IMG/VR virus record: IMGVR_UViG_3300025536_000010
Span: 124,001 to 188,000 of that record
DNA length: 64,000 nucleotides
Strand: one strand, 5' to 3'
Numbering within the stretch: position 1 is the stretch's first letter; each line of letters starts with the position of its first letter. Shown in pieces: positions 3,174 to 64,000 of this stretch. A program made the translations under genes and the position numbers. The notes under the pieces are model-generated. The model was not told the DNA's origin, did no database searches, and saw only the letters and a program-made list of their open reading frames with translations.

Positions 3174-3189
3174 CACAAGGAGGTGTACA

Positions 3190-12052: not shown

Positions 12053-12454
12053 ATGTCCTACTGGAACGGTTGGCCCCGAGAATGGGACTACAACGAGAAG
12101 CTCATCTGGCGAGCCCTCAGAGCCCTCCAGCGCTTCCCCGACAAGTGGCTAAGCGCGAGGACCGTTACCGCCCTTATGGACCCGCCCTGCCACCGGAGTC
12201 ACGGCCGCGGCTTCTGCCGGGCGCTGTACAAGATGGGCTACCTCGACCGCGACGACTGCGGCCACTATCGGGTGAACGCGCTCGGCGTACGGCACAGCCG
12301 CATGAACGACGAAGTACGCGAGTTGATGCGGCGGCGGGCTTACCGGCCCGTGCCGCTGCCGGAGGGTCTGGAGCACCTGTTCACGGACGAATCCCAGGCG
12401 CTCAGCAAGGCGCGGAAGGAGAGCACGGATGCCTCTCGGGCACTGGAACGTTGA
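12053..12454 (+). CDS. putative winged-helix protein
   Basis: WLSARTVTALM...RALYKMGYLDRDDCGHYRV pattern. Confidence 0.45.
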   Translation: MSYWNGWPREWDYNEKLIWRALRALQRFPDKWLSARTVTALMDPPCHRSHGRGFCRALYKMGYLDRDDCGHYRVNALGVRHSRMNDEVRELMRRRAYRPVPLPEGLEHLFTDESQALSKARKESTDASRALER

Positions 12455-13385
12455 ATGGCTGAACCACAACAGCCAACGAAGCTACCCCCTGGCGGATGAC
12501 GCCAGCGGCCTCGACGACAGCGGGGACTTCGAGCTTCCTGACGACTTCATCGTCGAACTGGACCTGCCGGTCCACGCCGGCATGGACGTAGACCCGGCGC
12601 GCTTCTTCATCAAACACATCGGGGCCTACTCGACCGGCTACGCTGTCATCGTCGGCTACCAACCCTCTGCCGGTGACGCTATCACAGTTGCCTCCGCCCT
12701 GATTCCGCGCCAGACGCACGCACGCAACACGGCCTACGCCCTGGGCGGCATCGAGCCCTTTGACGACACCGTGGGCAAGCTCGTCATCGGCAAGCTCGAC
12801 AACATCGACGAGCAGCCACCAGGCTACTGGAACTTCTCGCTGGAGAACGCCAGACTGGAACCCGACGCTGTCCGGCCGATCATTCGCGGTGTCTCCAGCG
12901 TCGTCTGCGTCAACGGCGACCAACGCTCGCTGCCGCTGCGTGGTGTGCTCGAACTCCAGGCCGGGCAGAACATGCAAATCATCCCGATCCTAGTGAGCGG
13001 GCAAGACCCAATCATTCGTTTCAACGCCATCGACGGCGAGGGTACAATCGACGAGTGCGTCTGCGAGGGCGACGCGGCTCCCACGGACCCGATCAAGCGC
13101 ATCAACGGCGTCGCCCCGACGCCTACCGGCGACTTCAACATCATCGGCACGGACTGCCTCCAGATCGAAGTGATCGCCAACGGTATTCGCCTGGTCGATA
13201 AATGCTCGGCCCCGTGTTGCGACTGCAAAGACCTGGAACGCATCACCCGCGACCTGGAACGCCTCAACAGTCAGGCCGCAACCGTCAACGACTTCGTCGA
13301 ACGCCTCCGAGACTCGGTCAACACGTTCGACCTGATCGTCCTCGGGTCCAAACTGGGCGACCGCGGCTGCGTCACCTGCGAATAG
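12429..13385 (+). CDS. Cys-rich tail protein, paralog 1 of 5
   Basis: EWLNHNSQRSYPL N-terminus; IKRINGVAP..GDF motif; PCCDC followed by coiled coil. Confidence 0.7.
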   Translation: MPLGHWNVEWLNHNSQRSYPLADDASGLDDSGDFELPDDFIVELDLPVHAGMDVDPARFFIKHIGAYSTGYAVIVGYQPSAGDAITVASALIPRQTHARNTAYALGGIEPFDDTVGKLVIGKLDNIDEQPPGYWNFSLENARLEPDAVRPIIRGVSSVVCVNGDQRSLPLRGVLELQAGQNMQIIPILVSGQDPIIRFNAIDGEGTIDECVCEGDAAPTDPIKRINGVAPTPTGDFNIIGTDCLQIEVIANGIRLVDKCSAPCCDCKDLERITRDLERLNSQAATVNDFVERLRDSVNTFDLIVLGSKLGDRGCVTCE

Positions 13386-13394
13386 GAGGCCAAG

Positions 13395-14948: not shown

Positions 14949-14958
14949 GGAGGCGTCG

Positions 14959-16656: not shown

Positions 16657-17495
16657 TGGCCCAGATCCTGTTCCCAGAATGGCGCAGGCAGAACGAGCCG
16701 ACCAAGTATCCGCTGGCGGAACAGGCCACCATGACCGCCCTGGACGGTCGTGTGCTAGTCGAAGGTACGTTCCTGGACGCCGCCCTGTACCCTATCGGAG
16801 CCAAAGCCGGCGTCTACCTGGCAGCCGTCACGCTCGATCACCAGAACGCTGTCATGGAACTGGGCGACCCGTTCGACAAAGCCCTGGCCTCGGCCACCTT
16901 CTCCTTGGTTGACCCGCCGGACGAGGTCGTCTTCGTCGACCGTTACGGCAGGCCGGCAGGCGTTATCGTCAGTGAGTCGACCCGGCTGGGCATCTTTCAG
17001 TCCTGGGGCGTCGGCCGGCACGAGTTCGCTCAGGAAGGCTCCGAGTTTGCTGCCACCTGCGTTATACCCACACCAGAGGTCGGCGTGCGCGGCTTCCTCC
17101 TGGAGACGGGCGAGTTGTTCGTAGGGGACGTGTGGCTGGTAGGCAGCGACGGCGTCGTCTTGCGCACCACGAACATCTCGGTGCCGGCCAGCTGCGGGCA
17201 ACCGGAGCGCACCGTCCGAGCCATCCGCGTCGACATCGTCGGCGACCCACTATTTCGCCGCCGGCTGTGTCAGCCGAACGACCTGTTCGACACGCCACGG
17301 TTCGTACGCACGGTGCGCGTCGTCGGCCCCAACTACACCTTCGAGTGTCCGCCGGACGCCGCCGGCAACCTCATGTTGGCCGCTGGCAACGGCCTGGCGG
17401 CAGACACGGTATTGCGGATCGCTGTTACCCCCAACGGGCTCAAGATCGGCTCGGTCGGCGAGTCGCAGAGTACCGAGAACGTGAACGCCTTCTAA
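16656..17495 (+). CDS. tail protein, paralog 4 of 5
   Basis: EWRRQNEPTKYPL; PPDAAGNL. Confidence 0.7.
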   Translation: MAQILFPEWRRQNEPTKYPLAEQATMTALDGRVLVEGTFLDAALYPIGAKAGVYLAAVTLDHQNAVMELGDPFDKALASATFSLVDPPDEVVFVDRYGRPAGVIVSESTRLGIFQSWGVGRHEFAQEGSEFAATCVIPTPEVGVRGFLLETGELFVGDVWLVGSDGVVLRTTNISVPASCGQPERTVRAIRVDIVGDPLFRRRLCQPNDLFDTPRFVRTVRVVGPNYTFECPPDAAGNLMLAAGNGLAADTVLRIAVTPNGLKIGSVGESQSTENVNAF

Positions 17496-17509
17496 AAAGT
17501 GGTTTATAG

Positions 17510-18502
17510 ATGTCCGAGAACTTCTACAACCTGAACGCCAACCGCTGCTACCCCTTCGTACTTCGCACAACGGGGCGCCCGGAGGACGGGCCGAGCACGC
17601 TGCTGAACCTGGCCCACGCCTGCGTGGTCGACGCCGGCTTCGTCCTCGCGGCCAAAAGTGGTTTCGCGTCGGGCGACCACACCGTCTACCTCAACCAGGT
17701 CCGGCGGCATGGCAGCACTTTCTATTTCGACTTCGCCTCGGACGCGCCTGAACTGTTCGAGGTGCCTTTGACGTTCACCCGCAACGTCGCCGATCCCGAC
17801 TACACCCTCAGCTTTACAGACTCGGGCGAGGTCGGGCTGTCTGAGTCGAGCGCATCGGGTAGTATGAGCCTGGGCGACGAATGTCTCGAACCGCTCTGGT
17901 CTGGTTTCCTGGTTTCGGGCAAGATGAGTGCCCTAGCACTGCTGCTGCCCGTGAACGGTACGATCACGAGGGGCGCCGGCGGTGCCGTCGTCGAACCGGC
18001 CTTGCTCCAGAACCTCGCTGGGACGTATGTCACGCGAGTCGGCCTGGCCAATGACGACCGCACCAGGGCGGACGCTCCCGAGGACTGCCCGGACATCGTG
18101 TTCCCTTACCCGACCGGGGTCATCCACATCCACACGAACTGCGTGGTGGGCGATCTGGTGTTCGTGGCAGGGGTCAACGCCGAAGTCCGGCAGAGTGACA
18201 CGGACAACGCTATCAGCTTTGGGGCCTCAGTCGGGGCCGGGGCGGGGCAGCCGTGCGACACCGTGGCCAGGTTCCCAGGGGAAGTGCCGCCCGAAGGCAG
18301 CAACCTCCTGGAAGGTGGGCTCCGCTGCAACGAGGTGTTGCGGTCGATCAACGGGATCGGTGGTCGGCAGTTCAACCTGATTGCCGGCCTGGGGGCCACC
18401 ATTGCCTCGGTGCCCGAGGAGAACAAGGTCGTCGTCGACCTCAACATGTTCGGCCTCGTGACGTGCTTCGACTCGATCTCCGAGGTATCGGAGAGTTGCT
18501 AG
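17510..18502 (+). CDS. tail protein, paralog 5 of 5
   Basis: FYNLNANRCYPFV; LRSINGIGG. Confidence 0.7.
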   Translation: MSENFYNLNANRCYPFVLRTTGRPEDGPSTLLNLAHACVVDAGFVLAAKSGFASGDHTVYLNQVRRHGSTFYFDFASDAPELFEVPLTFTRNVADPDYTLSFTDSGEVGLSESSASGSMSLGDECLEPLWSGFLVSGKMSALALLLPVNGTITRGAGGAVVEPALLQNLAGTYVTRVGLANDDRTRADAPEDCPDIVFPYPTGVIHIHTNCVVGDLVFVAGVNAEVRQSDTDNAISFGASVGAGAGQPCDTVARFPGEVPPEGSNLLEGGLRCNEVLRSINGIGGRQFNLIAGLGATIASVPEENKVVVDLNMFGLVTCFDSISEVSESC

Positions 18503-18512: not shown

Positions 18513-21500
18513 ATGGCAGACCACCCGGCGTTCGACCCCACCAAATGCGACGTGGAGCCGGTCGAGCGGATTCCCTGCGAAGACCTGCTCGTCGATCCGC
18601 GCGTGCCGGACCCGCCGAAAGAGATCCCGGACTGCCCAGCGACCGAGATCGAGAAGCTGCCGCCGGACCCGCCCTGCCCGGAGTTGAACGTCAAACGGCA
18701 CCCGGATTTCCCGTCGCCGCAAGTGCCGGCGTACATGGACCACGACATCTGCGAAACGCCCAAGTTAAACTTCAAAATCGAGAAGGTCGGCTGCTGCGAC
18801 TTTGATTTTGTCATCGACCTGTGCATCCCTTGCCCGGACCTGGAACCGCTCTACCCGTTCATTAAGGGCGTGCCTTTCACGTTCAGCGAGTCGACGCTGA
18901 CCTACGGCTTCATCCGCAAGCCAAACTGCGACTTCGAGTTCAGGATCGACCTGGAGATCCACTGTCCGTTTATCGGCCCGCTCGGGTTCGCCGTGAACAA
19001 GGGGGTACGTTACGGCCCGGCGCTGCTGACGTACAGCTTCTCCAAAACGGGAGCTTGCGATTATTTCCTGAACATCGACGTCTCCGTGCCTTGCCCGGCC
19101 GTTGGACCTATTTTTCCTGGCGAAGTGACGCCCATTCCTTTCAACGGCGTCAGCACGCTCGGCTTCCTCGTCTACTGGTTCAATCGCGGCGTAAACTGCA
19201 ACTACGATCTGGACATTTTTGCGGCAGCGCCGTGCCCGCCTATTGGCCCAAACGAGCCGCTGACCAAGCTGATCCCGTACAGCAAGCAGCAGACGATCCG
19301 CTACTACATGAGGCGTGCGCAAAACCCGGACGGCTCGCCGAAGTGCGAGTACGAACTCATCATCGACGCCCGCATCAAGTGCCCGCGCATCGAGCCGATC
19401 AACCTCAAGACGGTGCCGCTGACCCAGGTAAACACTGCGCCCAAGCTGCGCTACATCTTCCTGAAAAACGAGACGACCTGCGAATACGAACTGGTTATCC
19501 AGGGCGAATACCACTGCCCGAAGATGCTGCCAGACATCGCGGCGCCGCAGGTGCGGCCGATCCCGTTCGGAGCGGTGCAGCAGATCGTCTACTTCTTCCG
19601 CAAGCAAGGCATCTGCGACTACTTCCTGGACATCAACGCCAACATTATCTGCCCGCCGATGAAGCCAGAGGTCTGGAAGAACGTCAACCTCCAGCTGGTG
19701 CAGGTGCCGCCCAAGCTGCGCTTCCGCTTCGTCAAGATCCCGCCCTGCGGCTGGGAGTTGGAGATCGAAGGCGAGTGGCACTGCCCGATCATCAAACCTA
19801 TCGAGGCGGCCAAGGGCGAGCGCGGCGTCAAATTCGGCGACCCGGGGCAGATCCGCTGGTGGTTCGTCAAGATACTGCCCTGCGAGTTCGAGTTGAAAAT
19901 CGAACTCGACGTGCCGTGCCCGATCCTCAAACCCATCGTCGAACAAGAAGTCGACCTGGTCAAAGTGTTTGAGGCGCCCAAGCTATTTTTCAAGTTTGTC
20001 AAAGACCCCGCCGCCGATAAGTGCGAGTTCACCCTGGACATCTCCGGGGAATGGTTCTGCCCCATCGTGGACCCGCCGGAAGACGCCCCCGGAGTCGCGC
20101 CGCTAGGCGGCGGCGCGGGCGGCGAAATACGCTGGTGGTTCAGACGGGAAGCGCCTTGCCACTACGAGCTAATCATCGAAGGCGAGTGCCCCTGCGTAGT
20201 CATGCAGCCGGTCGACTTGACCAGCATACCGATCACCTTCACGAACAACGACGAAGGCTGGTTCGACTTCTATTTCGAGAAAGACCCGGACGACTGCATC
20301 TGGACGCTCGTCGTAGAAGAGATCCGCGTGCCGTGCCCCAAGATCGGGCCGACCGTGCTCGTCACCAAAGACGTTCACCCGGAGGACGTGCCCGGAGCCT
20401 TGGGCACGCTGGAGTATGTGTTTGTCAAAGCCGGAGCCGGCTGCCAGTACGACCTGGAAATCGACCTCATCACTCCTTGCCAGGAACACCTGCCCGATTG
20501 CGCGGCACCCGACGTCAAGCCAGTCCTCTGTTCGGGAACGTGCGAAGGCGAGTTGACCTACTGCTTCACGAAATACAACGAGTGCGATTACGATCTCAGC
20601 ATCGACGTCACCGTGCCGATCTGTCCGCCGGTCTGTACCTTCGACATCGAGATAAACTGCCACGACGAACCGTTTACGCCGACCGGCACCTGCGATGTTA
20701 CCGTCGTCAACGGTTGCGAACTCCAGTTCGACATGGTCTTGGACCTGGTCTGCGGCGGCGACGGCGATCAAGGCGCACAGGGGCATCAAGGCGCGCAAGG
20801 TGGAGCCGGCGGTGCCCAAGGACCACAAGGCCACCAGGGCGATCCTGGCGCTCAAGGCGATCCTGGCGACCCCGGACCACAAGGCGATCAGGGGCACCAA
20901 GGCGACCAGGGCGAAAAGGGCTGCGGCACCTGGCAAGGCCAGTGGCTGGCGGCTACCGCCTACGCAGCGTGCGACATCGTCTTCAACGACGGTGAGACGT
21001 TCCTCTGCACCGACGACCACACCTCGGCAAGTGGTGATGAGCCCGACATAGGAGCAACCTGGGCGACCAAATGGGACCGCATGGCCACCGGCATCAACTG
21101 GCGCGGTCCCTGGACAACGGCGACTGTCTACGGCGAGCACGACGCTGTCGAGAACAACGGCTCGTCCTACATCGCCAAGCTGACGCACACTTCCAGTGCG
21201 GGCACGGAACCTGGCGTGGGCGGCGGCTGGAACGTCGCCTGGGATCTGATGGCGGCCAAGGGAGCACAAGGCGCACAAGGCTCCCAAGGTGACCAAGGCA
21301 ACCAAGGTGTCCAGGGCAGGCAAGGCAACCAAGGCTTCCAAGGAAATCAGGGCACCCAAGGCTTCCAAGGGAATCAGGGCCTCCAGGGCCTCCAGGGCTC
21401 GACCGGCTCCAAACTGGCCATCGTGCCCTACTGGGACGAGTACGTTGCCCTGGCCTGCGTCGAAGCCCCCGAAGTACGCTTCGAGGACATCTTGCGAGTG

Positions 21501-21809
21501 CAGTTCAGCGGCGACCACCGCGACACGGTCATCGTTGACATTGACCCGGTATTTCTCGGCGTCTGCGAACCTGGTAGCATCGTTCCCGTCTCGGCTGTAC
21601 CCGCAACGCCGATCCCGGTTGGCGTGCAGGTCTGCGGCGGGCTAGTTTACGTCCGCGTCACGCGGAGCAGCGCAACGCCGCGCTTTCAAGGCGAAGTGAT
21701 TGTAAAACTGTCGGGCATCCGGCGGGATCACACCTGGCGCTTCCGGCGGCATACCGAAGACGACATGGTCGCCAACAACGCCTTCTGGCAAGGCTGGAAA
21801 AAGGAGTAA
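18513..21809 (+). CDS. tail fibre: ~15 Cys repeats, collagen-like segments, two CBM5/12-like modules, C-terminal chaperone-like domain
   Basis: C-x11-CP repeats; GxQ triplets ~20764-20920 and ~21261-21410; WQGQWLAATAY..D.V and WRGPWTTATVY..DAV; LACVEAPEVRFED. Confidence 0.8.
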   Translation: MADHPAFDPTKCDVEPVERIPCEDLLVDPRVPDPPKEIPDCPATEIEKLPPDPPCPELNVKRHPDFPSPQVPAYMDHDICETPKLNFKIEKVGCCDFDFVIDLCIPCPDLEPLYPFIKGVPFTFSESTLTYGFIRKPNCDFEFRIDLEIHCPFIGPLGFAVNKGVRYGPALLTYSFSKTGACDYFLNIDVSVPCPAVGPIFPGEVTPIPFNGVSTLGFLVYWFNRGVNCNYDLDIFAAAPCPPIGPNEPLTKLIPYSKQQTIRYYMRRAQNPDGSPKCEYELIIDARIKCPRIEPINLKTVPLTQVNTAPKLRYIFLKNETTCEYELVIQGEYHCPKMLPDIAAPQVRPIPFGAVQQIVYFFRKQGICDYFLDINANIICPPMKPEVWKNVNLQLVQVPPKLRFRFVKIPPCGWELEIEGEWHCPIIKPIEAAKGERGVKFGDPGQIRWWFVKILPCEFELKIELDVPCPILKPIVEQEVDLVKVFEAPKLFFKFVKDPAADKCEFTLDISGEWFCPIVDPPEDAPGVAPLGGGAGGEIRWWFRREAPCHYELIIEGECPCVVMQPVDLTSIPITFTNNDEGWFDFYFEKDPDDCIWTLVVEEIRVPCPKIGPTVLVTKDVHPEDVPGALGTLEYVFVKAGAGCQYDLEIDLITPCQEHLPDCAAPDVKPVLCSGTCEGELTYCFTKYNECDYDLSIDVTVPICPPVCTFDIEINCHDEPFTPTGTCDVTVVNGCELQFDMVLDLVCGGDGDQGAQGHQGAQGGAGGAQGPQGHQGDPGAQGDPGDPGPQGDQGHQGDQGEKGCGTWQGQWLAATAYAACDIVFNDGETFLCTDDHTSASGDEPDIGATWATKWDRMATGINWRGPWTTATVYGEHDAVENNGSSYIAKLTHTSSAGTEPGVGGGWNVAWDLMAAKGAQGAQGSQGDQGNQGVQGRQGNQGFQGNQGTQGFQGNQGLQGLQGSTGSKLAIVPYWDEYVALACVEAPEVRFEDILRVQFSGDHRDTVIVDIDPVFLGVCEPGSIVPVSAVPATPIPVGVQVCGGLVYVRVTRSSATPRFQGEVIVKLSGIRRDHTWRFRRHTEDDMVANNAFWQGWKKE

Positions 21810-21813
21810 TCGA

Positions 21814-23151
21814 ATGCTGGTCAGCGTTTTCACCCCGAGTCACAACCCCGAGTGGCTGGCCGACTGTTGGGCCTGCTTGCTGGAGCAAACGTACAAGGAA
21901 TGGGAGTGGATCATCGTCGCCAACGGCGACAACACCGACACAGTCGTCCTGTCTGTAGAGTTACTCTGCGGCGACGATCCGCGTGTCCGTGTCATCCGCT
22001 CCACCGAGACGAAGATCGGCGCGCTCAAACGGCTCGCCTGTGAGCAGGCGCTAGGCGACCTTTTCCTGGAGTACGACCACGACGACCTGCTCACCCACGA
22101 CTGTCTCGAAGCCGTGGTCGAGGCCGCCCGTGGGGCGCCCAAGGCCGCCTTTATCTGGTCCGACGACGTTAGCTGCGATTTCAGCGGGCAGAGCAAGCGC
22201 TACTCGGCTGACTGGGGCTGGCGGCAGACCCAGTGGACCTACAAGGGCAAGGAATACTGGATCAACGAGCATCACCCGATCACGGCTCGGTCCATGTGTG
22301 AGATTCTCTACACCCCGGACCACGTCCGCGTCTGGACCAGAGAAGCCTACCGACTGGTCGGCGGGCACAACAAGGAGATGCCCTACGGCGACGATCACGA
22401 ACTCATGGTGCGCACCTACCTCAAGGGCGTACCGTTCATTCATATCGCCAGGCCGTTGTACTTCCACCGGCAAGACGGCAAGAGCACCTGCCAGGTCAAA
22501 GTCAACGAGATCCAGCAGATCTCGCGGCAGAACCGCGACAAGTACCTGTACGACCTGGTCAAGGAATGGTGCCGCCGCGAAAAGCTGCCGATGTACGACC
22601 TGGGCGGCGCCCACGGTTGCCCGCTCGGCTACATCCCCATCGACATCAACCCCGCAGTCAAGCAGCACCCAGGCGGCATCTGCTGCGATGTCCTGCCCAA
22701 CGTCGACAACGAGGACGTCCGCGGCCTGAGCGGCCTTTACGCGCACCTCAAGCCAAACTCGGTCGGCTGCTTCCGGGCCTTCGACTTCCTGGAGCACATC
22801 CCCGGGCCGCAGATCCCGAAGCTGATGAACATGCTCTACGATCTGCTGGTGCCCGGCGGCTGGCTGCTGACTATGACGCCGGCCGTCTGCGACGACAACG
22901 GCCGGGCCGGACGCGGGGCCTATCAAGACCCCACGCACGTTTCGTTTTGGTCCAGCAACAACTTCTGGTACTACACCAAGAAGGACCAGGCCAAGTACGT
23001 CCCGGAGATCACCTGCCGCTTCCAGGCGGCGCGGCTGGCAAACCTCTACCCCAGCAAGTTTCACCACACGCATCTGATCCCCTACGTCCTCGCGGACTTG
23101 ATGGCTTTGAAAGACGGCAATGCGTACGCGCCGGGGCCGAAGGAGATCTAG
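21814..23151 (+). CDS. GT2 glycosyltransferase fused to a SAM-methyltransferase-like domain
   Basis: VSVFTPSHN...LLEQTYKEWEWII, YDHDDLL, GDDHEL; then YDLGGAH, AFDFLEHI, LVPGGWL, QDPTHVSFW. Confidence 0.85.
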   Translation: MLVSVFTPSHNPEWLADCWACLLEQTYKEWEWIIVANGDNTDTVVLSVELLCGDDPRVRVIRSTETKIGALKRLACEQALGDLFLEYDHDDLLTHDCLEAVVEAARGAPKAAFIWSDDVSCDFSGQSKRYSADWGWRQTQWTYKGKEYWINEHHPITARSMCEILYTPDHVRVWTREAYRLVGGHNKEMPYGDDHELMVRTYLKGVPFIHIARPLYFHRQDGKSTCQVKVNEIQQISRQNRDKYLYDLVKEWCRREKLPMYDLGGAHGCPLGYIPIDINPAVKQHPGGICCDVLPNVDNEDVRGLSGLYAHLKPNSVGCFRAFDFLEHIPGPQIPKLMNMLYDLLVPGGWLLTMTPAVCDDNGRAGRGAYQDPTHVSFWSSNNFWYYTKKDQAKYVPEITCRFQAARLANLYPSKFHHTHLIPYVLADLMALKDGNAYAPGPKEI

Positions 23152-25259
23152 TGCATACGTTCATCTTCAACAACAAATGGGCGCTCGGTGACACGGTCTG
23201 CCTCTCAGCCCTGGTGCGCGACCTACACCGAGCGTACCCCGGACAGTACCGCGTGCTGCTGGCCCAGCACTACCAGTCCTACTGGAAATACCTGAGCATC
23301 GCCAAGGCCCTGCCCGACAACGAGCAAGCCGCGGTGAAAGGCCAGGTGGTCCAGTTAGAGTACCTGTCAGGCATCAGGGCGGCCGGCAATGGCTCCAAAA
23401 GCCATTTTTTGGCTTACTGGCACCGGGCGTTCGAGAACGCCACCGGCCTGCGGGTGCCCTGCACCGAACCCAAAGGCGTCATCGGCTTGGCACCGGAGGC
23501 GCAGACGTCGCCCTACCCGTTCCGCTATTGGGTCGTCGTGGCCGGCGGCAAGCACGACGCCACAGTCAAAGTCTGGTACACGCATCGCTACCAGCAAGCC
23601 GTAGACACGCTCCAGGGCCTGGGCCTCAAGTTCGTCCAGGCCGGGGCTGACTTCAACAAACACTTTCACCCGCGGCTCCAGCGCGTGGAACAGTCCATCG
23701 GCAAGACCGACGACATTCAGGATTTCTTCCGCCTGATCTATCACGCCGAAGGCGTCCTCTGCGGCGTCACCGGAGCCATGCACATCGCCGCGGTCTTCGA
23801 CAAGCCCTGCGTCGTCGTGGCCGGTGGCCGGGAGGAGCCCTGGTGGGAGGCGTACACCAATTGTTACTTCCCCGAGTCTTTTGGCCCAGCCTGCGCGCCG
23901 GTGAAAGTCGAGCACACTTTTCTGCACACCCTGGGCCTGCTCGATTGTGGCTGCGGCAACCTCAACAAGGGCTGCTGGCGGGACCGGACAGTGCCCATCG
24001 AGCGCACGGACCACTCCAACGCCGCCCAGATCCACAAGCTATGCAAGCGGCCGATCCGCGACGCTCCCCAGGCCGTGCCCGAGTGCATGCACCTGATCGA
24101 AGTTGACCACGTCGTCGAGGCTGTCATGAACTACTACGAGAAAGGCATCTTGCCGCCCATCGGCAAGCCCACCCGCAAGTACGCCGAAGCGATAACGCTC
24201 GACTACCCAATGCAGCCGTTAGTCGGCACGCCGAAAGCGCCTAACCCGATCAAGGAACTCTGGGACAAGTCAGTCGCATCGGCGACGCCGATAGATCTGG
24301 CCCAGGAAAGAGAGAGACACAAGATCCGCGGCATCGGCACGAACATCACCCCACTGCTGCGCGACCTGCCGCCGCTGCCCAGGGAAGCCACGCACCTCAT
24401 GGTCAACCCGCCGACGCTGCGCGAGTTGGAAAAATGGGGCAGAGAGATGCCAAGGGAGGTTCAATCGCGGGTCGGGGAAGACCCTGACCTGGCAGTTCTC
24501 GACCACCCCTACATCGGCGGCAAGTTCACCGTGTTCGTCCTGGGATACGGGGAGCACCTGGCGCTGGTGAAACGCTGCCTCGGGTCGATCCTGGACAACG
24601 CTCCCTCAGCCAGGATCGACCTGCGCGTCGCCCTCAACCAACCGAGCAAGCCCATGCTCGACTACATCACCGGCTTCGACAAGAAGACTGTGACACGGGT
24701 CTATCTCGACCACGGCGACCGGCGGAAATACCCGGCCATGCGAGAGATGTTCTGGGACGACAGCTGCCCTATCGAAACCAAATACGTCCTGTGGTTCGAC
24801 GACGACAGCCACGTCGTCGACAAGAAATGGCTGGTCGAACTCGGCCACGTCATCGTCGGCAACCACCCGCACGGCAGTCGCATGTTTGGCTGCAAGTACA
24901 TTCACGACCTGATGGGCTTCCGCCGGCGCGGCTTTGCCCCTGAGAAGTGGTTCCAGGCAGCCCGCTGGTGGCAAAGTAAGCCGCTGCACCTGGCCAAAGG
25001 CGCGCGTACCGGCCCCAACGGCAGCGAGATCGTCTTCGCTTCTGGCGGCTTCTGGGCCTTGGCCACAGAAGTCATCCGCAAAGCAGACATCCCGGACGCG
25101 CGCTTGAACCACAACGGCGGCGACATCACCATCGGCGCCCAGGTCCACCAGGCCGGGTTCAAGGTTTGCGATTTCGCCCGCGGCAAGAAGCCGGTGTGCT
25201 GGTCGGACGCCCAGCGCCGCGGCTATCACGAGGCGTTCCCCTGGAGTGAGGTAACGTGA
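23151..25259 (+). CDS. GT9 (heptosyltransferase-like) plus GT2-like glycosyltransferase fusion
   Basis: GTG 23151 after AGGAG; ALGDTVCLSALVRDLHRAYPG, LIYHAEGVLCGVTGAMHIAAVFDKPCVV; C-terminal YVLWFDDDSH and GGD. Confidence 0.8.
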   Translation: MHTFIFNNKWALGDTVCLSALVRDLHRAYPGQYRVLLAQHYQSYWKYLSIAKALPDNEQAAVKGQVVQLEYLSGIRAAGNGSKSHFLAYWHRAFENATGLRVPCTEPKGVIGLAPEAQTSPYPFRYWVVVAGGKHDATVKVWYTHRYQQAVDTLQGLGLKFVQAGADFNKHFHPRLQRVEQSIGKTDDIQDFFRLIYHAEGVLCGVTGAMHIAAVFDKPCVVVAGGREEPWWEAYTNCYFPESFGPACAPVKVEHTFLHTLGLLDCGCGNLNKGCWRDRTVPIERTDHSNAAQIHKLCKRPIRDAPQAVPECMHLIEVDHVVEAVMNYYEKGILPPIGKPTRKYAEAITLDYPMQPLVGTPKAPNPIKELWDKSVASATPIDLAQERERHKIRGIGTNITPLLRDLPPLPREATHLMVNPPTLRELEKWGREMPREVQSRVGEDPDLAVLDHPYIGGKFTVFVLGYGEHLALVKRCLGSILDNAPSARIDLRVALNQPSKPMLDYITGFDKKTVTRVYLDHGDRRKYPAMREMFWDDSCPIETKYVLWFDDDSHVVDKKWLVELGHVIVGNHPHGSRMFGCKYIHDLMGFRRRGFAPEKWFQAARWWQSKPLHLAKGARTGPNGSEIVFASGGFWALATEVIRKADIPDARLNHNGGDITIGAQVHQAGFKVCDFARGKKPVCWSDAQRRGYHEAFPWSEVT

Positions 25260-25621
25260 AAGACGGGGTCAAGTTCGCCGTCGACAACATGGTGCTGTTC
25301 CAGATGCTCGGGGACAGCTTCTTCTATCAGGCCCTGCCGGCCTACTGCGGCGACTTGCAACAGGCCGGCAAGGCCGCCTACGACCGAGTCGTACGCGCGG
25401 CCCTCAAAAACGAAGACGACCCGGCCTGTTTCGGCTGCTCGTCGCTCAATAAAGTCATCGACCCGTGGCGGGATACGCTGGGGCAGCGTCTGGCCAAGGC
25501 GGATGCGGGCGATCTCGAAGCACTGGCGGCGTACATCGGCGGCAAACGGGGCTATCGCCCCAGGCCCATCGTGATGTACTATAAGGACGAGCGAGGGAAA
25601 AAAGCGATCCTTTCGTTCTAG
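25256..25621 (+). CDS. small CxxC protein (paralog of 26112-26435)
   Basis: CFGC; C-terminus YYKDERGKKAILSF. Confidence 0.65.
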   Translation: MKDGVKFAVDNMVLFQMLGDSFFYQALPAYCGDLQQAGKAAYDRVVRAALKNEDDPACFGCSSLNKVIDPWRDTLGQRLAKADAGDLEALAAYIGGKRGYRPRPIVMYYKDERGKKAILSF

Positions 25622-25640
25622 GACGGACAGGAGGCCAAGG

Positions 25641-26099
25641 ATGGCCGGGCGTAGACTGAAACTCCAAAAGTACGAACTGCTGCATGTCAACTTCCTCTAC
25701 CTGGGCGGCTTCCGGCTGCGCGTGGAGGCGAGTGACCCGCTCGGCAGCGGCGCCGACCCGAATGTCTTCCTTTTCCTCCGCGATGTCCTGAACCCTTACG
25801 ACCAGACGATTGATGATCTTTTCCAGGGCGTCGCTTCGGTCGTGGACATGGCCGAGTACCCCGTGGGGGAACCGAACAACAACACGACCTACCCAATGTT
25901 CAGGCTCGATTTCTTCGAGATCGACCTGCGAACAACGGAACTGGCGCAGAAGACCTGGCTGCTCGTCCAGGAGGAAGTCAGCAACCTGCTGCTGATCCTG
26001 GACCGCATGGAACAACTAGAACCGACCGAGGAGGTCTGGGTGGGGGCACCCGAGGAAGATGAGGGCGGCTCGTCTTCTTCCTCCTCTGTAAGTGCGTAA
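25641..26099 (+). CDS. hypothetical protein with Ser-rich C-terminus
   Basis: SD GGAGG; ends EEDEGGSSSSSSVSA. Confidence 0.7.
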   Translation: MAGRRLKLQKYELLHVNFLYLGGFRLRVEASDPLGSGADPNVFLFLRDVLNPYDQTIDDLFQGVASVVDMAEYPVGEPNNNTTYPMFRLDFFEIDLRTTELAQKTWLLVQEEVSNLLLILDRMEQLEPTEEVWVGAPEEDEGGSSSSSSVSA

Positions 26100-26111
26100 G
26101 GAGATGCACCA

Positions 26112-26435
26112 ATGCCAGATGCCAAAGGTAAGCGACCCCTGGTAGTCCTCGAAGATAGCACCCTGGCCGGCATGGCCCTCAACGCCGGCATCGTGCGCGA
26201 GTTCCCCTTCCTGTCTTCTCTGGGGAAGGCCGTGAAGGGCGACCTCCCGCGCCGCGGCTGCGGCTCTTGCGGCGGCAGCGGCGGTGTCCGCGCCGAAGTC
26301 TTTACTGCGGCAAAGTCCACCATCGCGGGGCTCGACGGGACCAAGAAGCGACGCCTCAAGGAATTACTGAACGCGCAAAACGCCCGCGTGACTTACAAGA
26401 ACGCCAGCGGCAAGGTGGTGCAGTTGACGTTCTAA
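26112..26435 (+). CDS. small CxxC protein
   Basis: CGSC; C-terminus TYKNASGKVVQLTF; SD AAGGAG. Confidence 0.7.
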   Translation: MPDAKGKRPLVVLEDSTLAGMALNAGIVREFPFLSSLGKAVKGDLPRRGCGSCGGSGGVRAEVFTAAKSTIAGLDGTKKRRLKELLNAQNARVTYKNASGKVVQLTF

Positions 26436-26607
26436 GCCCGCAGCCCATCCGCTACCTACCTCCACCCCACGTCTCCTACCACATTCAATCTTTGAGGCCA
26501 GTGCCGCGGTCCCCGGCGCTGGCCTCTGTCTTTGCCTAAATATCCGCCACGGATAAGTCACAATAGTTGAGGTGGAACCGCTTCGTTCTCTTAACCCCGG
26601 AGATCCC

Positions 26608-27925: not shown

Positions 27926-28596
27926 TAATCTGCCCCAACGCCCGACAGGCCAAACAGGTACTCACGATCTTGGACAGACGCTCCTACGAGGCTCTGTTCA
28001 AGGTCGTGCTGCGCTTGAAGACCGCCGAGGACCGCGGCAAACCGCTCGACGCCTACGAGCAACTGGTGGCCTACACCTACGAGTGGCTCAAGCATCTGGG
28101 CTGTGTCGACGCTGCCCAGATCGAACGACTCCTGAGCCGCATGCGTCAGACCTTGAAAGCCTTCGGGCAGCAGCTGACCTTCCACCTGGAAACAGTGCTG
28201 GCCAGGCCGCCTTGCTTGCTAAACCTCATCGACCGCCGCTACGCCGTCTGGGACGGGCAGCTGGACTTCTACGACTTCGTCGAAGACAGTGTCGTCACAG
28301 TCTTGCCTTACCGGCCGGTCACCCACTACACCGTCGACCTGCTCGCCCTGTTCGTCCAGAAACAAGCGTGGCTGGACAAGATTGGAGGCAAGGATGCCAA
28401 GCACACCCGACATCAACATCATGCCGCCGACCGTGGCACACCCGAGGGTGAACCAGACCCAGGTGCTGCGCAAGGTGCTGACCAGCGAGGAGACGTTTGC
28501 CACGACGCTCCTGGTACTGGTGATCGACCAGTGGGGAACGGAGGCTCTGGAGTGGAGCCCGACCGTCCTCCGCATGGAACTGGAGGAGACGTTTGA
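27922..28596 (+). CDS. hypothetical protein
   Basis: Coupled start; last ~65 codons overlap the next gene. Confidence 0.6.
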   Translation: MIICPNARQAKQVLTILDRRSYEALFKVVLRLKTAEDRGKPLDAYEQLVAYTYEWLKHLGCVDAAQIERLLSRMRQTLKAFGQQLTFHLETVLARPPCLLNLIDRRYAVWDGQLDFYDFVEDSVVTVLPYRPVTHYTVDLLALFVQKQAWLDKIGGKDAKHTRHQHHAADRGTPEGEPDPGAAQGADQRGDVCHDAPGTGDRPVGNGGSGVEPDRPPHGTGGDV

Positions 28597-29131
28597 CGTC
28601 CAGCTGCCGCAAGAGAACTTGGACAAGCTCGTGGCCGGTATCACCATCGTCACCACGGACATGTTCTTCAAGGACGTCAGCCGGTTCATCCAGCTGTGCA
28701 ACGTGCTCGCGGGGTCACCGTTTGACCCCGAAGAGTTCGATCCGGCGGATAGCCTGGAGTGCGCCTGGGGTATCACCGAGGCGCTCATGCTTTCCCCGCC
28801 GGATGAAGAAGACCCCGAGCCCTTTAGCGACGAGGTGCGCCACTACGTCGCTTTCGTACTCAAGGAGGAGGGGTACATCAAGGCCCCGGACATCCTGGGG
28901 ATCGCCTTGAACGCGGATCTTTCGGCACAAGTCAGTACCGACTTCGCCGACGACCCCGAGATGTTCCAGGCGCTCTACTCGATGCAGCAGGACAAGGCCA
29001 CCGAGATCGACGAGATCCTCAAAGGCAACCTGCTGGAGTTGCTAGGGCAGTTGAAGGCCCTGCCGCTGGAGAACGGCGACACGGCCGAAATCGAGAAGCG
29101 GCTGGCAGCCATGTTGAAGGTGACTGCTTAG
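28394..29131 (+). CDS. hypothetical acidic helical protein
   Basis: SD GGAGG before ATG 28394; strong codon bias. Confidence 0.75.
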   Translation: MPSTPDINIMPPTVAHPRVNQTQVLRKVLTSEETFATTLLVLVIDQWGTEALEWSPTVLRMELEETFDVQLPQENLDKLVAGITIVTTDMFFKDVSRFIQLCNVLAGSPFDPEEFDPADSLECAWGITEALMLSPPDEEDPEPFSDEVRHYVAFVLKEEGYIKAPDILGIALNADLSAQVSTDFADDPEMFQALYSMQQDKATEIDEILKGNLLELLGQLKALPLENGDTAEIEKRLAAMLKVTA

Positions 29132-63477: not shown

Positions 63478-63669
63478 ATGTTACCTGAACCATCCAAGCC
63501 TGGAGTCCAGCTGTGCATGAAGTGCGGCTGGAAGTTCATCAGTCCTGACCCGGAGCGTATCCGTCGCTGTCAGGACTGCAAGAAACACGAAGAACTGTAC
63601 GAACCGCCCTCGGGGAGGCTAGTCCTCACCGAGGGCATCGTACACATCCTCTGGGAGTTCCAGCAGTGA
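63478..63669 (+). CDS. small Zn-ribbon protein
   Basis: GGAGG SD; CMKC..F.S...RRCQDC. Confidence 0.65.
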   Translation: MLPEPSKPGVQLCMKCGWKFISPDPERIRRCQDCKKHEELYEPPSGRLVLTEGIVHILWEFQQ

Positions 63670-64000
63670 GCGTCGTACGCAAGATCATCGTCCTGGGTGA
63701 CGTTATTCTCGACCGTACGGTTTTCTGCCGTATCAAGGGCCTCTCGCCTGAAAACCAAAATATCTTCGACGTCGAAGAGAAGCACGGCGACAACGCCCTG
63801 GGTGGGGCTGGCAACGTCGCTGCCAACTGCTTCGGGCTGTTCGGGCAGAAAGACGGTCAGTCGGTGCTACCGCTGTTCCTGGTCGCGGCCGACGATGCTG
63901 GCAGGGAGATTACCTGCCTGTTGAACTGTCTGCATGTGGAGTACGGCCTGGACCGTTACTACGGCGGCGTGACAGCGGAGAAGATTCGCTACGTCACCAG
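63666..64000 (+). CDS. HldE/RfaE-like sugar (heptose-7-phosphate) kinase, PfkB family, 5' part only
   Basis: My translation from GTG 63666 (GTGA overlap): IIVLGDVILDRTVFCRIKGLSPEN...LGGAGNVAANC...DDAGREI...TAEKIRY; open to window end; not in ORF track. Confidence 0.8.
   Translation, partial: MSVVRKIIVLGDVILDRTVFCRIKGLSPENQNIFDVEEKHGDNALGGAGNVAANCFGLFGQKDGQSVLPLFLVAADDAGREITCLLNCLHVEYGLDRYYGGVTAEKIRYVT

What the first reader, a model, noticed from the sequence alone, without database searches (positions are those of the whole stretch)
21814..25259. Candidate phage virion-glycosylation (heptosylation) system beside the tail fibre
Seen: directly after the fibre gene are a GT2-methyltransferase fusion and a GT9-GT2 fusion, giving three GT domains and one MTase-like domain. 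The GT9 part ends in a Cys cluster (LDCGC..NKGCWRDR...LCKRP...PECMHLI, ~23944-24100). An HldE-like kinase lies at 63666 onward. Known: GT9-fold TibC/Aah enzymes use ADP-heptose to O-heptosylate Ser on proteins and carry a Cys-coordinated iron finger; HldE is part of ADP-heptose synthesis. Inference: the phage boosts an NDP-heptose pool and builds an extended, possibly methyl-capped glycan on its own tail proteins.
Basis: partly seen in the sequence, partly recalled or inferred. Interest (0 to 1): 0.8.

Follow-up and report, generated by a model that had tools for sequence, protein, structure and literature searches.

The report
Phage tail-fibre glycosylation gene cassette
An uncultured 235-kb phage from a subsurface metagenome carries, inside its tail operon right after a collagen-like fibre gene, two multi-domain sugar-transferase genes, plus its own ADP-heptose-type sugar-activation genes elsewhere; this most likely decorates its tail fibres with a methylated, heptose-containing glycan, which has not been shown for any phage.

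Summary
ORF1 (21814-23151) is a GT2 + SAM-methyltransferase fusion. ORF2 (true start GTG 23151, to 25259) has a GT9-fold domain, four invariant cysteines, a disordered linker and a GT-A domain. The HldE-like gene at 63666 is a complete heptose-7-P-kinase-like gene, followed just outside the window by a separate heptose-1-P-adenylyltransferase-like gene.

ORF2 is a core gene of a large lineage of 150-240 kb uncultured phages. It always sits between the baseplate/fibre genes and the same small downstream genes, inside the tail operon. The stretch in front of it is a variable island of collagen-like fibres and extra GT and methyltransferase genes.

ORF1-type fusions are common in unrelated phages. 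They lie directly downstream of collagen-like fibre genes in 16 of 66 loci, against 1 downstream of them.

Cellular relatives of the GT9-Cys4 domain (mainly Planctomycetota and Verrucomicrobiota) are fused to more GT and methyltransferase domains and often sit next to hldE.

A heptose-using, methyl-adding glycan pathway tied to tail fibres is therefore well supported by context. The acceptor, the donor and a specific TibC relationship are not shown: the fold matches TibC and WaaC/WaaF equally well, and TibC's N-terminal barrel is absent. Rivals are envelope (LPS) or DNA glycosylation.

The parts
18513..21809 (+). Tail fibre gene (1098 aa). It holds 14 Cys-rich repeats of about 45 aa, two collagen-like GXY runs (residues 767-802 and 917-967) flanking two CBM_5_12 modules, and a C-terminal domain. 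It is the candidate acceptor protein.
   Evidence: Pfam Collagen and CBM_5_12; tail-fibre PHROGs; repeat count; sequence.
21814..23151 (+). ORF1: a soluble GT2 (GT-A, DHDD motif at 88-91) fused to a class-I SAM-methyltransferase-like domain (about residues 255-445). It is an accessory gene, present only in the closest relatives.
   Evidence: Pfam; PDB profile match to the chondroitin polymerase GT domain at 3e-26; model pLDDT 94 with GT-A matches; found only in L006/L007/L008, with a partial match in L055; no TM-like segment.
23151..24155 (+). ORF2 N-terminal GT9-fold (GT-B) domain, residues 1-335. The GD14 motif, K134, T138, K140, W142, T207, MH210-211 and GGRE225-228 are conserved.
23946..24086 (+). 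Cys4 module (C266, C275, C298, C312). It lies in an insertion of about 80 residues between the last C-lobe strand and the C-terminal helix of the GT9 domain. It is a presumed metal (Fe or Zn) knuckle.
   Evidence: Invariant. Position taken from the DSSP of the model. The geometry was not checked because no coordinates were available.
24156..24470 (+). Low-confidence, length-variable linker of ORF2 (about residues 336-440).
   Evidence: pLDDT below 50 for 339-364, 377-381 and 394-415; gapped and unconserved in the alignment.
24471..25259 (+). ORF2 C-terminal GT-A-fold glycosyltransferase domain (residues about 441-702) with invariant WFDDD (548-552) and NHNGGD motifs. It belongs to no Pfam family.
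25256..26435 (+). Three small genes of unknown function (25256-25621, 25641-26099, 26112-26435). They follow ORF2 in the same operon. The second and third are conserved after ORF2 in 62 and 41 of 77 related loci.
   Evidence: No Pfam or Atlas information.
26494..26526 (+). Strongest terminator-like hairpin of the region (13-bp stem, 10 G-C pairs, T-rich tail). It is the likely end of the tail, fibre and GT operon.
   Evidence: The number of such sites in the region is not above the shuffled expectation, so this rests on the quality and position of this one site.
63666..64000 (+). [quoted passage not shown] The HldC-like adenylyltransferase gene (178 aa) follows immediately beyond the window end.

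Best explanation
ORF1 and ORF2 are soluble cytoplasmic enzymes made late, together with the baseplate and fibre proteins. They build a short glycan directly on a virion tail protein, most probably the collagen-like fibre encoded just upstream.

Proposed steps:
1. ORF2 is the lineage's constant enzyme. Its GT9-Cys4 domain transfers the first sugar, inferred to be heptose from ADP-heptose.
2. ORF2's tethered GT-A domain adds a second sugar.
3. In this phage, ORF1 adds a further sugar through its GT2 domain and O-methylates the glycan through its methyltransferase domain.
4. The phage's own HldA-like kinase and HldC-like adenylyltransferase raise the ADP-heptose supply from host heptose-7-phosphate.
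5. The variable set of extra GT and methyltransferase genes in relatives would make the fibre glycan differ between phages.

Shown: the domains, the conservation, the synteny, the hldE linkage and the collagen-fibre linkage. Inferred: the donor, the acceptor, the order of steps, the metal site, and the biological role (fibre stability, solubility or shielding).
For: 1. The catalytic equipment is intact and conserved.
- The GD14 base motif, K134/K140 and GGRE of GT9, the DDD of the GT-A domain and the DHDD of ORF1 are conserved.
- More than 600 full-length ORF2 homologues exist.
- Both models are confident.

2. The genes are placed in the tail operon.
- There is a 4-nt gap after the fibre gene, and ORF1/ORF2 and ORF2/next-gene overlap.
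- The strong hairpin comes only at 26494.
- In 77 IMG/VR loci the order is conserved: baseplate genes, variable fibre region, ORF2, then g25641/g26112.
- In one relative the ORF2 homologue lies between a fibre gene and an Mtd_N receptor-binding protein gene.

3. The variable region upstream of ORF2 in 32 relatives holds 13 collagen-repeat proteins together with 6 GT2, 2 GT1, 3 Methyltransf_24, one GT-D-like and one Capsule_synth protein.

4. There is an independent association for ORF1.
- ORF1-type GT2-MTase fusions have more than 581 relatives in viral contigs.
- They have a collagen-like GXY run within 5 kb upstream on the same strand in 16 of 66 distinct loci. The figures are 1 downstream, 0 on the other strand, and 0 of 38 in control HldA loci.
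- Their neighbours match collagen-like tail-fibre PHROGs.

5. Evidence for a heptose donor.
- The fold is GT9.
- The phage has HldA-like and HldC-like genes.
- Another lineage member carries both the ORF2 homologue and the HldA/HldC pair on one contig.
- In 9-11 of 80 cellular loci the GT9-Cys4 gene is followed in the same orientation by bifunctional hldE.

6. There are no membrane segments, and no lipid-carrier, flippase or polymerase genes beside either the phage or the cellular genes. This fits direct cytoplasmic glycosylation.

7. Precedents exist.
- TibC heptosylates a protein in the cytoplasm with a Cys4 finger that contacts the substrate (PMC4358343).
- PBCV-1 A064R is a GT-GT-methyltransferase fusion acting on the capsid glycan (PMC7826918).
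- Mycobacteriophage virions carry phage-made glycans (as summarised in PMC12619734).
Against: - No direct evidence for any acceptor exists. Synteny is the only link to the fibre.
- The collagen runs of this fibre are GXQ-rich and poor in Ser/Thr, so an obvious O-glycosylation repeat is missing.
- In some relatives ORF2 follows the baseplate gene with almost no fibre gene between them (267-1060 nt). The acceptor may therefore be another tail protein.
- The position matching WaaC Asp261, written DTG/DSG from memory of the GT9 motif, is Val or Ile in the whole family. Sugar binding thus differs from the known heptosyltransferases.
- HldA/HldC lie 38 kb away, in the replication and repair module, not with the GT genes.
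- HldA-HldC pairs are common in viral contigs that show no GT9 within 5 kb.
- Cellular homologues next to hldE could be LPS-core enzymes.
- Only 43% of the genome could be read.
Confidence: 0.45

Rival explanations
1. Envelope modification. ORF2 (with or without ORF1) heptosylates and extends the host's LPS core or another envelope glycolipid during infection. The purpose would be to mask receptors, so that progeny do not adsorb to debris or so that other phages are excluded. The cellular GT9-Cys4 + hldE operons would then be the PVC-type LPS-core pathway from which the phage gene was taken.
For: - The only sequence-level PDB relatives are WaaC and WaaF, and WaaF is the top Foldseek hit.
- The N-terminus is WaaC-like (beta1-GD-alpha1) and lacks TibC's barrel.
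- Cellular homologues sit next to hldE.
- Published annotations of such phage genes call them LPS heptosyltransferases and auxiliary metabolic genes (PMC10747093).
- From general knowledge, surface-modifying genes are often found beside tail-fibre genes in temperate phages.
Against: - ORF2 is a core gene inside the late structural operon of a 235-kb phage lineage, not a terminal add-on.
- No Kdo-transferase, lipid A or Lpt genes were seen beside the cellular homologues whose neighbours were scanned.
- LPS made late in infection would have little time to reach the surface (inference).
- The recurrent, directional link of GT and methyltransferase genes to collagen-like fibre genes has no explanation under this model.
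Confidence: 0.2
2. DNA hypermodification. The HldA/HldC-like pair makes a nucleotide-heptose for glycosylating modified bases in phage DNA. Either ORF1/ORF2 are the DNA glycosyltransferases, or they have nothing to do with the heptose genes.
For: - A phage kinase + nucleotidyltransferase + GT-B cluster was shown to put one or two heptoses on 5hmC in DNA (bioRxiv 10.1101/2023.12.21.572611).
- Here HldA/HldC lie among Mre11/Rad50-like, helicase, DNA polymerase and ligase genes.
- A dCTP-deaminase-like gene is nearby.
Against: - No cytosine C5-methyltransferase, TET/JBP-type oxygenase or thymidylate-synthase-like hydroxymethylase was found in the 101 kb inspected, which includes the replication module.
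- The published DNA GT-B enzymes resemble T4 beta-GT, BshA and MshA, not GT9, whereas ORF2's N-domain matches GT9 structures.
- ORF1/ORF2 are in the tail operon.
- 57% of the genome is unread, so this cannot be excluded.
Confidence: 0.1
3. Virion glycosylation, but not heptose. ORF1/ORF2 glycosylate tail proteins using other host nucleotide sugars. The GT9-Cys4 subfamily would have a different donor, and the HldA/HldC genes would serve another purpose.
For: - The family lacks the acidic residue at the position matching WaaC Asp261 (the role of that residue is from memory of the WaaC literature).
- Scores against GT9 models are marginal.
- The HldA and HldC matches are below the curated equivalog cut-offs.
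- HldA/HldC pairs are widespread in viral contigs that show no GT9 within 5 kb.
Against: - hldE is adjacent in the cellular operons (11 of 80 loci, against about 0.2 expected for a single-copy gene in an 8-Mb genome; the loci are related to each other, so this is not a formal test).
- All characterised structures among the top fold matches to the N-domain use ADP-heptose.
- All cellular best hits of the kinase carry heptose-7-P kinase names.
Confidence: 0.15

Closest known systems
TibC/Aah bacterial autotransporter heptosyltransferases (BAHT; PDB 4RAP, 4RB4; PMC4358343)
   Same: Both have a GT9-type GT-B fold (Foldseek E about 2e-8). Both have a conserved four-Cys module inserted late in the C-lobe, about 20 A from the active site in TibC. 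Both are soluble cytoplasmic enzymes encoded next to a long repetitive surface fibre or adhesin gene. The N-lobe is small in both: only 3 DSSP strands in ORF2, and a reduced four-stranded lobe is described for TibC.
   Different: There is no detectable sequence relationship. ORF2 lacks the N-terminal beta-barrel of about 97 residues. The Cys spacing differs (9/23/14 against 3/16/12). ORF2 is fused to a second (GT-A) transferase. The neighbour is a phage tail fibre, not an autotransporter. Oligomeric state and metal are unknown.
LPS heptosyltransferases WaaC/WaaF (GT9; PDB 2H1H, 1PSW)
   Same: These are the best, though weak, sequence-profile matches (E 0.0016-0.004), and WaaF is the top fold match. 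The N-terminal GD catalytic motif, the K-x-W phosphate-binding region and the (T)G-x-MH-x-AA motif align.
   Different: ORF2 has an extra Cys4 insertion of about 80 residues and a shorter N-lobe. It has Val/Ile at the position of WaaC Asp261. It is fused to a GT-A domain. It lies in a phage tail operon with no LPS genes nearby.
Chlorovirus PBCV-1 A064R and A111/114R (multi-domain capsid-glycan enzymes; PMC7826918)
   Same: These are virus-encoded, soluble, multi-domain proteins that combine two GT domains with a methyltransferase capping the terminal sugar. They act on a virion protein without the host's lipid-linked machinery.
   Different: They belong to a eukaryotic virus, use different GT families and sugars (rhamnose, xylose), and target the capsid. 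No homology was shown here beyond a shared GT-A fold class.
Mycobacteriophage virion glycosylation (Freeman et al. 2023, as summarised in PMC12619734; the original paper was not available)
   Same: Phage-encoded glycosyltransferases attach glycans to virion proteins, there the C-termini of the capsid and tail-tube subunits.
   Different: The host type (Actinobacteria) and the enzymes differ. No GT9, no heptose-activation genes and no fibre linkage are known to me there. tblastn of ORF2 against 50,697 GenBank phage records found nothing.
Phage DNA heptosylation clusters (Pyle et al., bioRxiv 10.1101/2023.12.21.572611)
   Same: A phage-encoded sugar kinase plus nucleotidyltransferase feeds a GT-B enzyme that transfers heptose.
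   Different: There the acceptor is 5hmC in DNA, the GT is T4-beta-GT-like, and the genes cluster with C5-methyltransferase and TET-like genes. None of these was found in the part of this genome that could be read.
Planctomycetota/Verrucomicrobiota GT9-Cys4 multi-domain proteins with adjacent hldE (uncharacterised; found here)
   Same: They share 32-41% identity over residues 1-334, including all four Cys. They follow the same design: the GT9-Cys4 domain is fused to further GT and methyltransferase domains.
   Different: The partner domains differ (a second GT9, Mannosyl_trans3, FkbM/Methyltransf_11/24). The genes are chromosomal, next to bifunctional HldE and a small DUF6171 protein. Their function is unknown.

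Membership tests
BAHT (TibC/Aah protein heptosyltransferases) | GT-B catalytic core of GT9 type | tested here: met
   Foldseek finds TibC chains at E 2e-8 to 4e-7 with probability 1.00. WaaF, WaaC and 3tov score equally well or better.
BAHT (TibC/Aah protein heptosyltransferases) | N-terminal flattened beta-barrel (TibC residues 1-97) | tested here: not met
   The model starts with strand 2-8, the GD14 motif and helix 12-28. Nothing precedes the Rossmann lobe.
BAHT (TibC/Aah protein heptosyltransferases) | Four conserved Cys forming a 1Fe-0S iron finger inserted in the C-lobe | tested here: inconclusive
   Four invariant Cys lie in a late C-lobe insertion. Their spacing differs from TibC's 339/342/358/370. 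The geometry could not be checked because no model coordinates were available, and the metal is unknown.
BAHT (TibC/Aah protein heptosyltransferases) | Detectable sequence homology to TibC/Aah | tested here: not met
   Neither phmmer nor the 35-sequence profile finds TibC at E <= 10.
BAHT (TibC/Aah protein heptosyltransferases) | Dodecameric ring, beta-hairpin thumb, and heptosylation of Ser on a beta-helical substrate | not testable with these tools
   This needs biochemistry or a complex model.
CAZy GT9 / Pfam PF01075 heptosyltransferases | Match to the family model above its threshold | tested here: inconclusive
   The window protein scores 21.2 bits against a gathering score of 22. Most homologues carry PF01075 in precomputed annotation, and cellular relatives score 24.8-76 bits.
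CAZy GT9 / Pfam PF01075 heptosyltransferases | Catalytic Asp in the N-terminal GD motif and Lys in the phosphate-binding loop | tested here: met
   G13-D14, K134 and K140 are invariant and align with the WaaF/WaaC motifs.
CAZy GT9 / Pfam PF01075 heptosyltransferases | Acidic residue of the D(T/S)G motif that contacts the heptose (WaaC Asp261, from memory of the WaaC literature) | tested here: not met
   The aligned position is V206: Val in 57 and Ile in 6 of 63 sequences.
CAZy GT9 / Pfam PF01075 heptosyltransferases | Use of ADP-heptose as donor | not testable with these tools
   The support is contextual only: phage HldA/HldC and hldE adjacency in cellular homologues.
HldE / HldA + HldC (ADP-heptose synthesis) | PfkB-type kinase whose best match is rfaE domain I | tested here: met
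   TIGR02198 at 3.9e-42 (144.5 bits), against ribokinase at 42.8 bits. This is below the equivalog cut-off of 345. All named cellular hits are heptose-7-P kinases.
HldE / HldA + HldC (ADP-heptose synthesis) | Nucleotidyltransferase whose best match is rfaE domain II, adjacent to the kinase | tested here: met
   TIGR02199 at 9.9e-31 (106.5 bits, cut-off 181.5). The gene starts at the kinase's stop codon.
HldE / HldA + HldC (ADP-heptose synthesis) | The rest of the pathway (GmhA isomerase, GmhB phosphatase, HldD epimerase) in the phage | tested here: not met
   No SIS, HAD or epimerase family was found in the 101 kb read. 57% of the genome was not read, and the host may supply these enzymes.
GT2 (Pfam PF00535), ORF1 N-domain | Family match above threshold, DxD motif and GT-A fold | tested here: met
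   61.7 bits against 23.3. D88, D90 and D91 of the DHDD motif are invariant and H89 nearly so. Foldseek finds the K4CP GT domain at E 8e-15, rmsd 3.3 A.
Class I SAM methyltransferase, ORF1 C-domain | Family match and Rossmann-like fold with a glycine-rich SAM loop | tested here: inconclusive
   Methyltransf_23 scores 27.9 against 27 bits over 61 residues. There is a weak PDB profile match to a phosphoethanolamine methyltransferase (E 0.0065). A DLGG motif and alternating beta/alpha elements are present. No methyltransferase structure appears among the 50 fold matches listed, all of which are to the GT domain.

The most novel reading that the evidence does not exclude
A whole lineage of 150-240 kb phages, and through ORF1-type genes many unrelated phages, coat their collagen-like tail fibres with phage-specified glycans. 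A conserved Cys4-bearing GT9/GT-A enzyme would prime the fibre with heptose from phage-made ADP-heptose. A rapidly exchanging set of neighbouring GT and methyltransferase genes would diversify the glycan.

If true, this would be:
- the first protein heptosylation outside bacterial autotransporters;
- the first virion glycosylation system in phages outside those of Actinobacteria;
- a second, non-protein layer of fibre variability.

The related PVC-bacterial GT9-Cys4/hldE operons would then mark an unrecognised cytoplasmic protein-heptosylation pathway.
Probability: 0.3. Interest if true: 0.8.

Novelty: new variant of a known kind. Interest (0 to 1): 0.62.

Why it matters
Virion glycosylation by phage-encoded enzymes is so far documented for mycobacteriophages, and for giant viruses of eukaryotes.

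A fibre-linked cassette that is core to a widespread lineage of uncultured jumbo phages, and partly shared with many other phages, would have three consequences.
- Glycans would be a common and overlooked part of phage tail fibres. That bears on host recognition, fibre stability, and the use of sequence alone to predict host range.
- It would extend protein heptosylation beyond the TibC/Aah virulence system.
- It would give a function to the many 'LPS heptosyltransferase' and hldE-type genes in viromes that are routinely filed as auxiliary metabolic genes.

The link between the GT9-Cys4 family and hldE in Planctomycetota and Verrucomicrobiota also points to an uncharacterised cellular pathway.

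Tried and rejected
- **Known phages.** Megablast of 18-26 kb and tblastn of ORF2 against 50,697 GenBank phage records gave no match. The terminase is at most 27% identical to those of cultured phages, so there is no cultured relative to lean on.
- **PHROGs and PDB by sequence.** PHROGs gave nothing for ORF1, for ORF2 or for nine of ten structural-module proteins. Single-sequence PDB search of ORF2 gave only a spurious WD-repeat match.
- **TibC versus WaaC.** I tried to separate them by profile and by fold. They could not be separated. Model coordinates are not exposed, so the Cys4 geometry and a domain-wise superposition could not be done.
- **Moraphages.** I considered that the lineage is the published 'moraphages', which have four core GT families. 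I rejected this as unsupported: those are predicted to infect Bacteroidota, whereas this window is 62% GC with PVC-like homologues.
- **gmhA/gmhB/hldD and 5hmC enzymes.** I walked the contig with five look-ups and scanned the window's ORFs. None was found in 101 kb. The remaining 133 kb was out of reach at about 10 kb per look-up.
- **Co-occurrence of HldA with ORF2 across the lineage.** This was only partly testable, because the lists are capped at 80 loci. One further contig carries both.
- **Downstream small genes.** Pfam and the ESM Atlas say nothing about them.
- **Other checks.** There are no tRNAs in the window. The only sequencing run holding the region is the source DNA run from a subsurface metagenome, so there was no RNA run to test co-transcription and read laying was not used. 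No TM-like segments were found, so a membrane-embedded polysaccharide synthase is rejected.

Full report
**What the window is**

The 64-kb window is 62% G+C. Nearly all genes lie on the + strand.
- It encodes a baseplate-wedge-like protein, a collagen-like tail fibre, an AAA ATPase and an intein-containing large terminase.
- It is part of a 234,608-bp metagenome contig (ENA k141_298286). An almost identical 234,886-bp IMG/VR contig exists. The only sequencing run holding it is from a subsurface metagenome.
- There is no DNA or ORF2-protein match in 50,697 GenBank phage records. The terminase is at most 27% identical to those of cultured phages.
- It is therefore an uncultured jumbo phage with no cultured relative.

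**Check of the observation**

- Gene layout. The fibre gene ends at 21809. ORF1 is 21814-23151 (445 aa). The long ORF 22566-25259 overlaps ORF1 out of frame. Its real start is the GTG at 23151, behind an AAGGAG, giving a 702-aa ORF2.
- ORF1. It has Pfam GT2 (1.1e-16) and Methyltransf_23 (2.3e-6, just above threshold). Its model is very confident (pLDDT 94, pTM 0.92). The N-domain superposes on GT2 enzymes such as the K4 chondroitin polymerase GT domain.
- ORF2 N-terminal part. It misses the Pfam GT9 threshold by 0.8 bit. Its homologues carry PF01075. A 35-sequence profile finds WaaC and WaaF (E about 0.002). The model (pLDDT 86) matches GT9 structures at E 1e-10 to 1e-7.
- ORF2 linker and C-terminal part. 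Residues about 336-440 are a disordered, length-variable linker. Residues about 441-702 form a GT-A fold with an invariant WFDDD motif and no Pfam family.
- Cysteine cluster. Four cysteines (C266, C275, C298, C312; nt 23946-24086) are invariant in 35 phage homologues. They are present in 62-63 of 63 cellular or MAG homologues, together with D14, K134, K140, W142, T207, M210-H211 and G225-G226-R227-E228.
- HldE-like ORF at 63666. It continues beyond the window as a 351-aa PfkB protein whose best family is rfaE domain I (3.9e-42). It is followed at once by a 178-aa protein whose best family is rfaE domain II (9.9e-31). This is a split HldA/HldC pair. Both score below the curated equivalog cut-offs. 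All named cellular relatives of the kinase are heptose-7-phosphate kinases.
- Verdict.

**ORF2 is a core gene of the tail module**

- More than 600 proteins share ORF2's full architecture. Many sit on contigs of 150-240 kb, and 77 distinct IMG/VR loci were fetched.
- By tblastn, the order is conserved. Five baseplate-module genes (window 12429-18502) come first, then a variable stretch of 0.3-8.7 kb, then ORF2. The homologues of 25641-26099 follow (62 of 77 loci) and of 26112-26435 (41 of 77), then 28289-29131 (64 of 77) and the AAA ATPase.
- In the window the genes are packed. There is a 4-nt gap after the fibre gene, and both ORF1/ORF2 and ORF2/next-gene overlap. The best terminator-like hairpin of the region lies at 26494-26526, after the third small gene.
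- ORF1 is accessory. It is found only in the three closest relatives, with a partial match in a fourth.
- In one relative from an NCBI MAG, the ORF2 homologue lies between a 782-aa fibre gene and an Mtd_N (receptor-binding protein) gene.

**The variable stretch is a fibre-plus-glycosylation island**

I scanned 87 proteins encoded between the last conserved baseplate gene and ORF2 in 32 distinct relatives.
- 13 have collagen repeats.
- 6 have GT2, 2 have GT1, and 3 have Methyltransf_24.
- One has a GT-D-like domain and one a Capsule_synth domain.

The pattern is one constant enzyme (ORF2) next to a changing set of transferases and methyltransferases and changing fibre genes. Loci that diversify a surface glycan look like this.

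**An independent line: ORF1-type fusions and collagen-like fibres**

- ORF1's GT2-MTase architecture is very common. There are 365 clusters at 50% identity with E <= 1e-30 and more than 581 relatives in IMG/VR. Most are in contigs unrelated to this lineage (median 45% G+C), with no GT9 or HldA within 8 kb.
- Among 115 neighbouring proteins (two genes on each side, 31 loci), the most frequent PHROGs are the collagen-like tail-fibre families. These are the same families that the window's fibre matches.
- I counted collagen-like runs (at least 8 GXY) within 5 kb.

| Locus set | Distinct loci | Upstream, same strand | Downstream, same strand | Other strand |
|---|---|---|---|---|
| ORF1-like | 66 | 16 | 1 | 0 |
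| ORF2-like | 52 | 24 | 1 | 9, all upstream |
| HldA (control) | 38 | 0 | 0 | 0 |

- About equal sequence was available on the two sides of the ORF1-like loci.
- The control loci are lower in G+C. The upstream/downstream and strand asymmetry within the same loci is therefore the better control.
- This directional link between a glycosyltransferase-methyltransferase gene and a collagen-like fibre gene, in unrelated phages, is the strongest argument that fibre proteins are the target.

**Donor sugar**

Three things point to ADP-heptose.
1. The fold is GT9, and the characterised structures among the top fold matches all use ADP-heptose.
2. The phage has its own HldA/HldC-like genes. A second lineage member (ORF2 45% identical) carries both genes on one contig, about 26 kb apart.
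3. The N-domain including the Cys4 module has more than 559 relatives in GTDB genomes, mostly Planctomycetota and Verrucomicrobiota and including complete chromosomes.
   - There it stands alone, or is fused to a second GT9 domain plus one or two methyltransferases, or to a Mannosyl_trans3 domain.
   - In 9-11 of 80 loci it is followed, co-directionally, by a bifunctional hldE. Often a small DUF6171 protein comes next, and a TylF-like O-methyltransferase or another GT lies between.

Against a heptose donor:
- The family has Val or Ile where WaaC has Asp261. The role of that residue is from my memory of the WaaC literature.
- HldA/HldC lie 38 kb from ORF2, in the replication and repair module.
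- HldA-HldC pairs are common in viral contigs with no GT9 nearby: 61 of 80 loci have the pair.
- No gmhA, gmhB or hldD was found in the 101 kb (43%) of the genome I could read.

**TibC or WaaC?**

The tools do not separate them.
- For TibC-likeness: there is a four-Cys module in a late C-lobe insertion, just before the C-terminal helix. The N-lobe is small. The enzyme is soluble and encoded beside a long repetitive surface protein (PMC4358343).
- Against: there is no sequence relationship and no N-terminal beta-barrel. The Cys spacing differs. WaaF and an uncharacterised GT9 score slightly better by Foldseek.
- I therefore do not file ORF2 as a BAHT. It may still work like one.

**Mechanism I consider most likely (confidence 0.45)**

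The enzymes glycosylate a tail protein, most likely the collagen-like fibre, in the cytoplasm late in infection. ORF2 primes (GT9 domain, heptose) and extends (GT-A domain). ORF1 extends further and methylates. The phage's HldA/HldC raise ADP-heptose.

- Shown: the domains, the conservation, the operon placement, the collagen-fibre association and the hldE association.
- Inferred: the donor, the acceptor, the order of steps, the metal site and the role.
- Weak points: this fibre's collagen runs are GXQ-rich and poor in Ser/Thr. Some relatives have almost no fibre gene between the baseplate gene and ORF2.

**Rivals**

1. LPS or envelope modification (0.2). It is favoured by the WaaC/WaaF resemblance and the hldE-linked cellular homologues. 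It is disfavoured by the core position in the late structural operon, by the absence of LPS genes beside the cellular homologues whose neighbours were scanned, and by the directional fibre linkage.
2. DNA heptosylation (0.1). A published phage kinase + nucleotidyltransferase + GT-B cluster heptosylates 5hmC, and HldA/HldC sit among replication genes. However, no base-activating enzyme was found in the part read, and those DNA GTs are not GT9.
3. Virion glycosylation with a non-heptose donor (0.15).

**Comparison with what is known, and novelty**

- Virus-encoded virion glycosylation is known. PBCV-1 A064R is a GT-GT-methyltransferase fusion (PMC7826918). Mycobacteriophage capsid and tail-tube glycans are summarised in PMC12619734.
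- Protein heptosylation is known only for autotransporters (PMC4358343).
- Phage GT9 and hldE-type genes are usually annotated as LPS auxiliary metabolic genes (PMC10747093). BFVD and the ESM Atlas show many uncharacterised phage GT9 fusions.
- Seven full-text literature searches found no description of a fibre-linked GT9/GT-A/methyltransferase cassette or of virion heptosylation.
- I rate it a new variant of a known kind. It is interesting mainly because it is widespread and directly testable.

Noticed in passing
window 18513-21809 (residues 95-705 of the fibre): The fibre shaft consists of 14 tandem repeats of about 45 aa, each with the motif C-x-[YFW]-x-[LF]-x-[IV]...C-P. There are 44 Cys in the first 740 residues. 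Two collagen runs bracketing two CBM_5_12 modules follow. I do not recognise this Cys-rich repeat shaft. The cysteines might bind metal or form disulfides.
   Followed up: partly
window 46002-48389 (- strand): The large terminase subunit (GpA_ATPase-like) is interrupted by an intein (Intein_splicing and Hint domains). It is the only long minus-strand gene seen in the window.
   Followed up: no
L170, L179, L181, L183, L184, L193, L216, L225 (Planctomycetota genomes and MAGs): These loci show a conserved chromosomal arrangement: a GT9-Cys4 multi-domain protein (with a second GT9 and methyltransferases, or beside a Mannosyl_trans3 or TylF-like gene), then bifunctional HldE, then in several of the loci a small DUF6171 protein. 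It is an uncharacterised cellular heptose-glycan pathway with no lipid-carrier genes nearby.
   Followed up: partly
L084-L162 (IMG/VR contigs): Adjacent HldA-like and HldC-like genes occur in 61 of 80 viral loci fetched, mostly at about 35% G+C and with no GT9 within 5 kb. Phage-encoded ADP-heptose activation is therefore widespread, and its acceptor in those phages is unknown.
   Followed up: partly
L249-L325 (IMG/VR contigs): ORF1-type GT2-methyltransferase fusions number more than 581 in IMG/VR. They lie just downstream of collagen-like tail-fibre genes in about a quarter of distinct loci. This is a general phage association that I have not seen described.
   Followed up: yes
window 3094-4134, and L245 13082-14026: One gene encodes a matrixin-type Peptidase_M10 (1.3e-29). 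A PG_binding_1 match (5e-4) came from one of the 48 small ORFs scanned together and was not assigned to a gene. The M10 gene lies among structural genes and could be a virion-associated or lysis enzyme.
   Followed up: no
window about 52941-54043 and neighbouring genes, and L245 9269-9997: There are a dCTP-deaminase-like gene, an RNA-polymerase alpha CTD-like gene and, just upstream of the window, a Sigma70_r3-like gene. Elsewhere in the window are NUDIX, RNase H and GNAT genes. The NUDIX enzyme could in principle act on ADP-sugars.
   Followed up: no
L164 8776-9924: In a phage-like contig binned with an Aquaspirillum MAG, the gene just upstream of a split ORF2 homologue encodes a 383-aa protein with DUF6171. 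This is the same domain that follows hldE in several of the Planctomycetota operons. It hints that DUF6171 belongs to the pathway.
   Followed up: no
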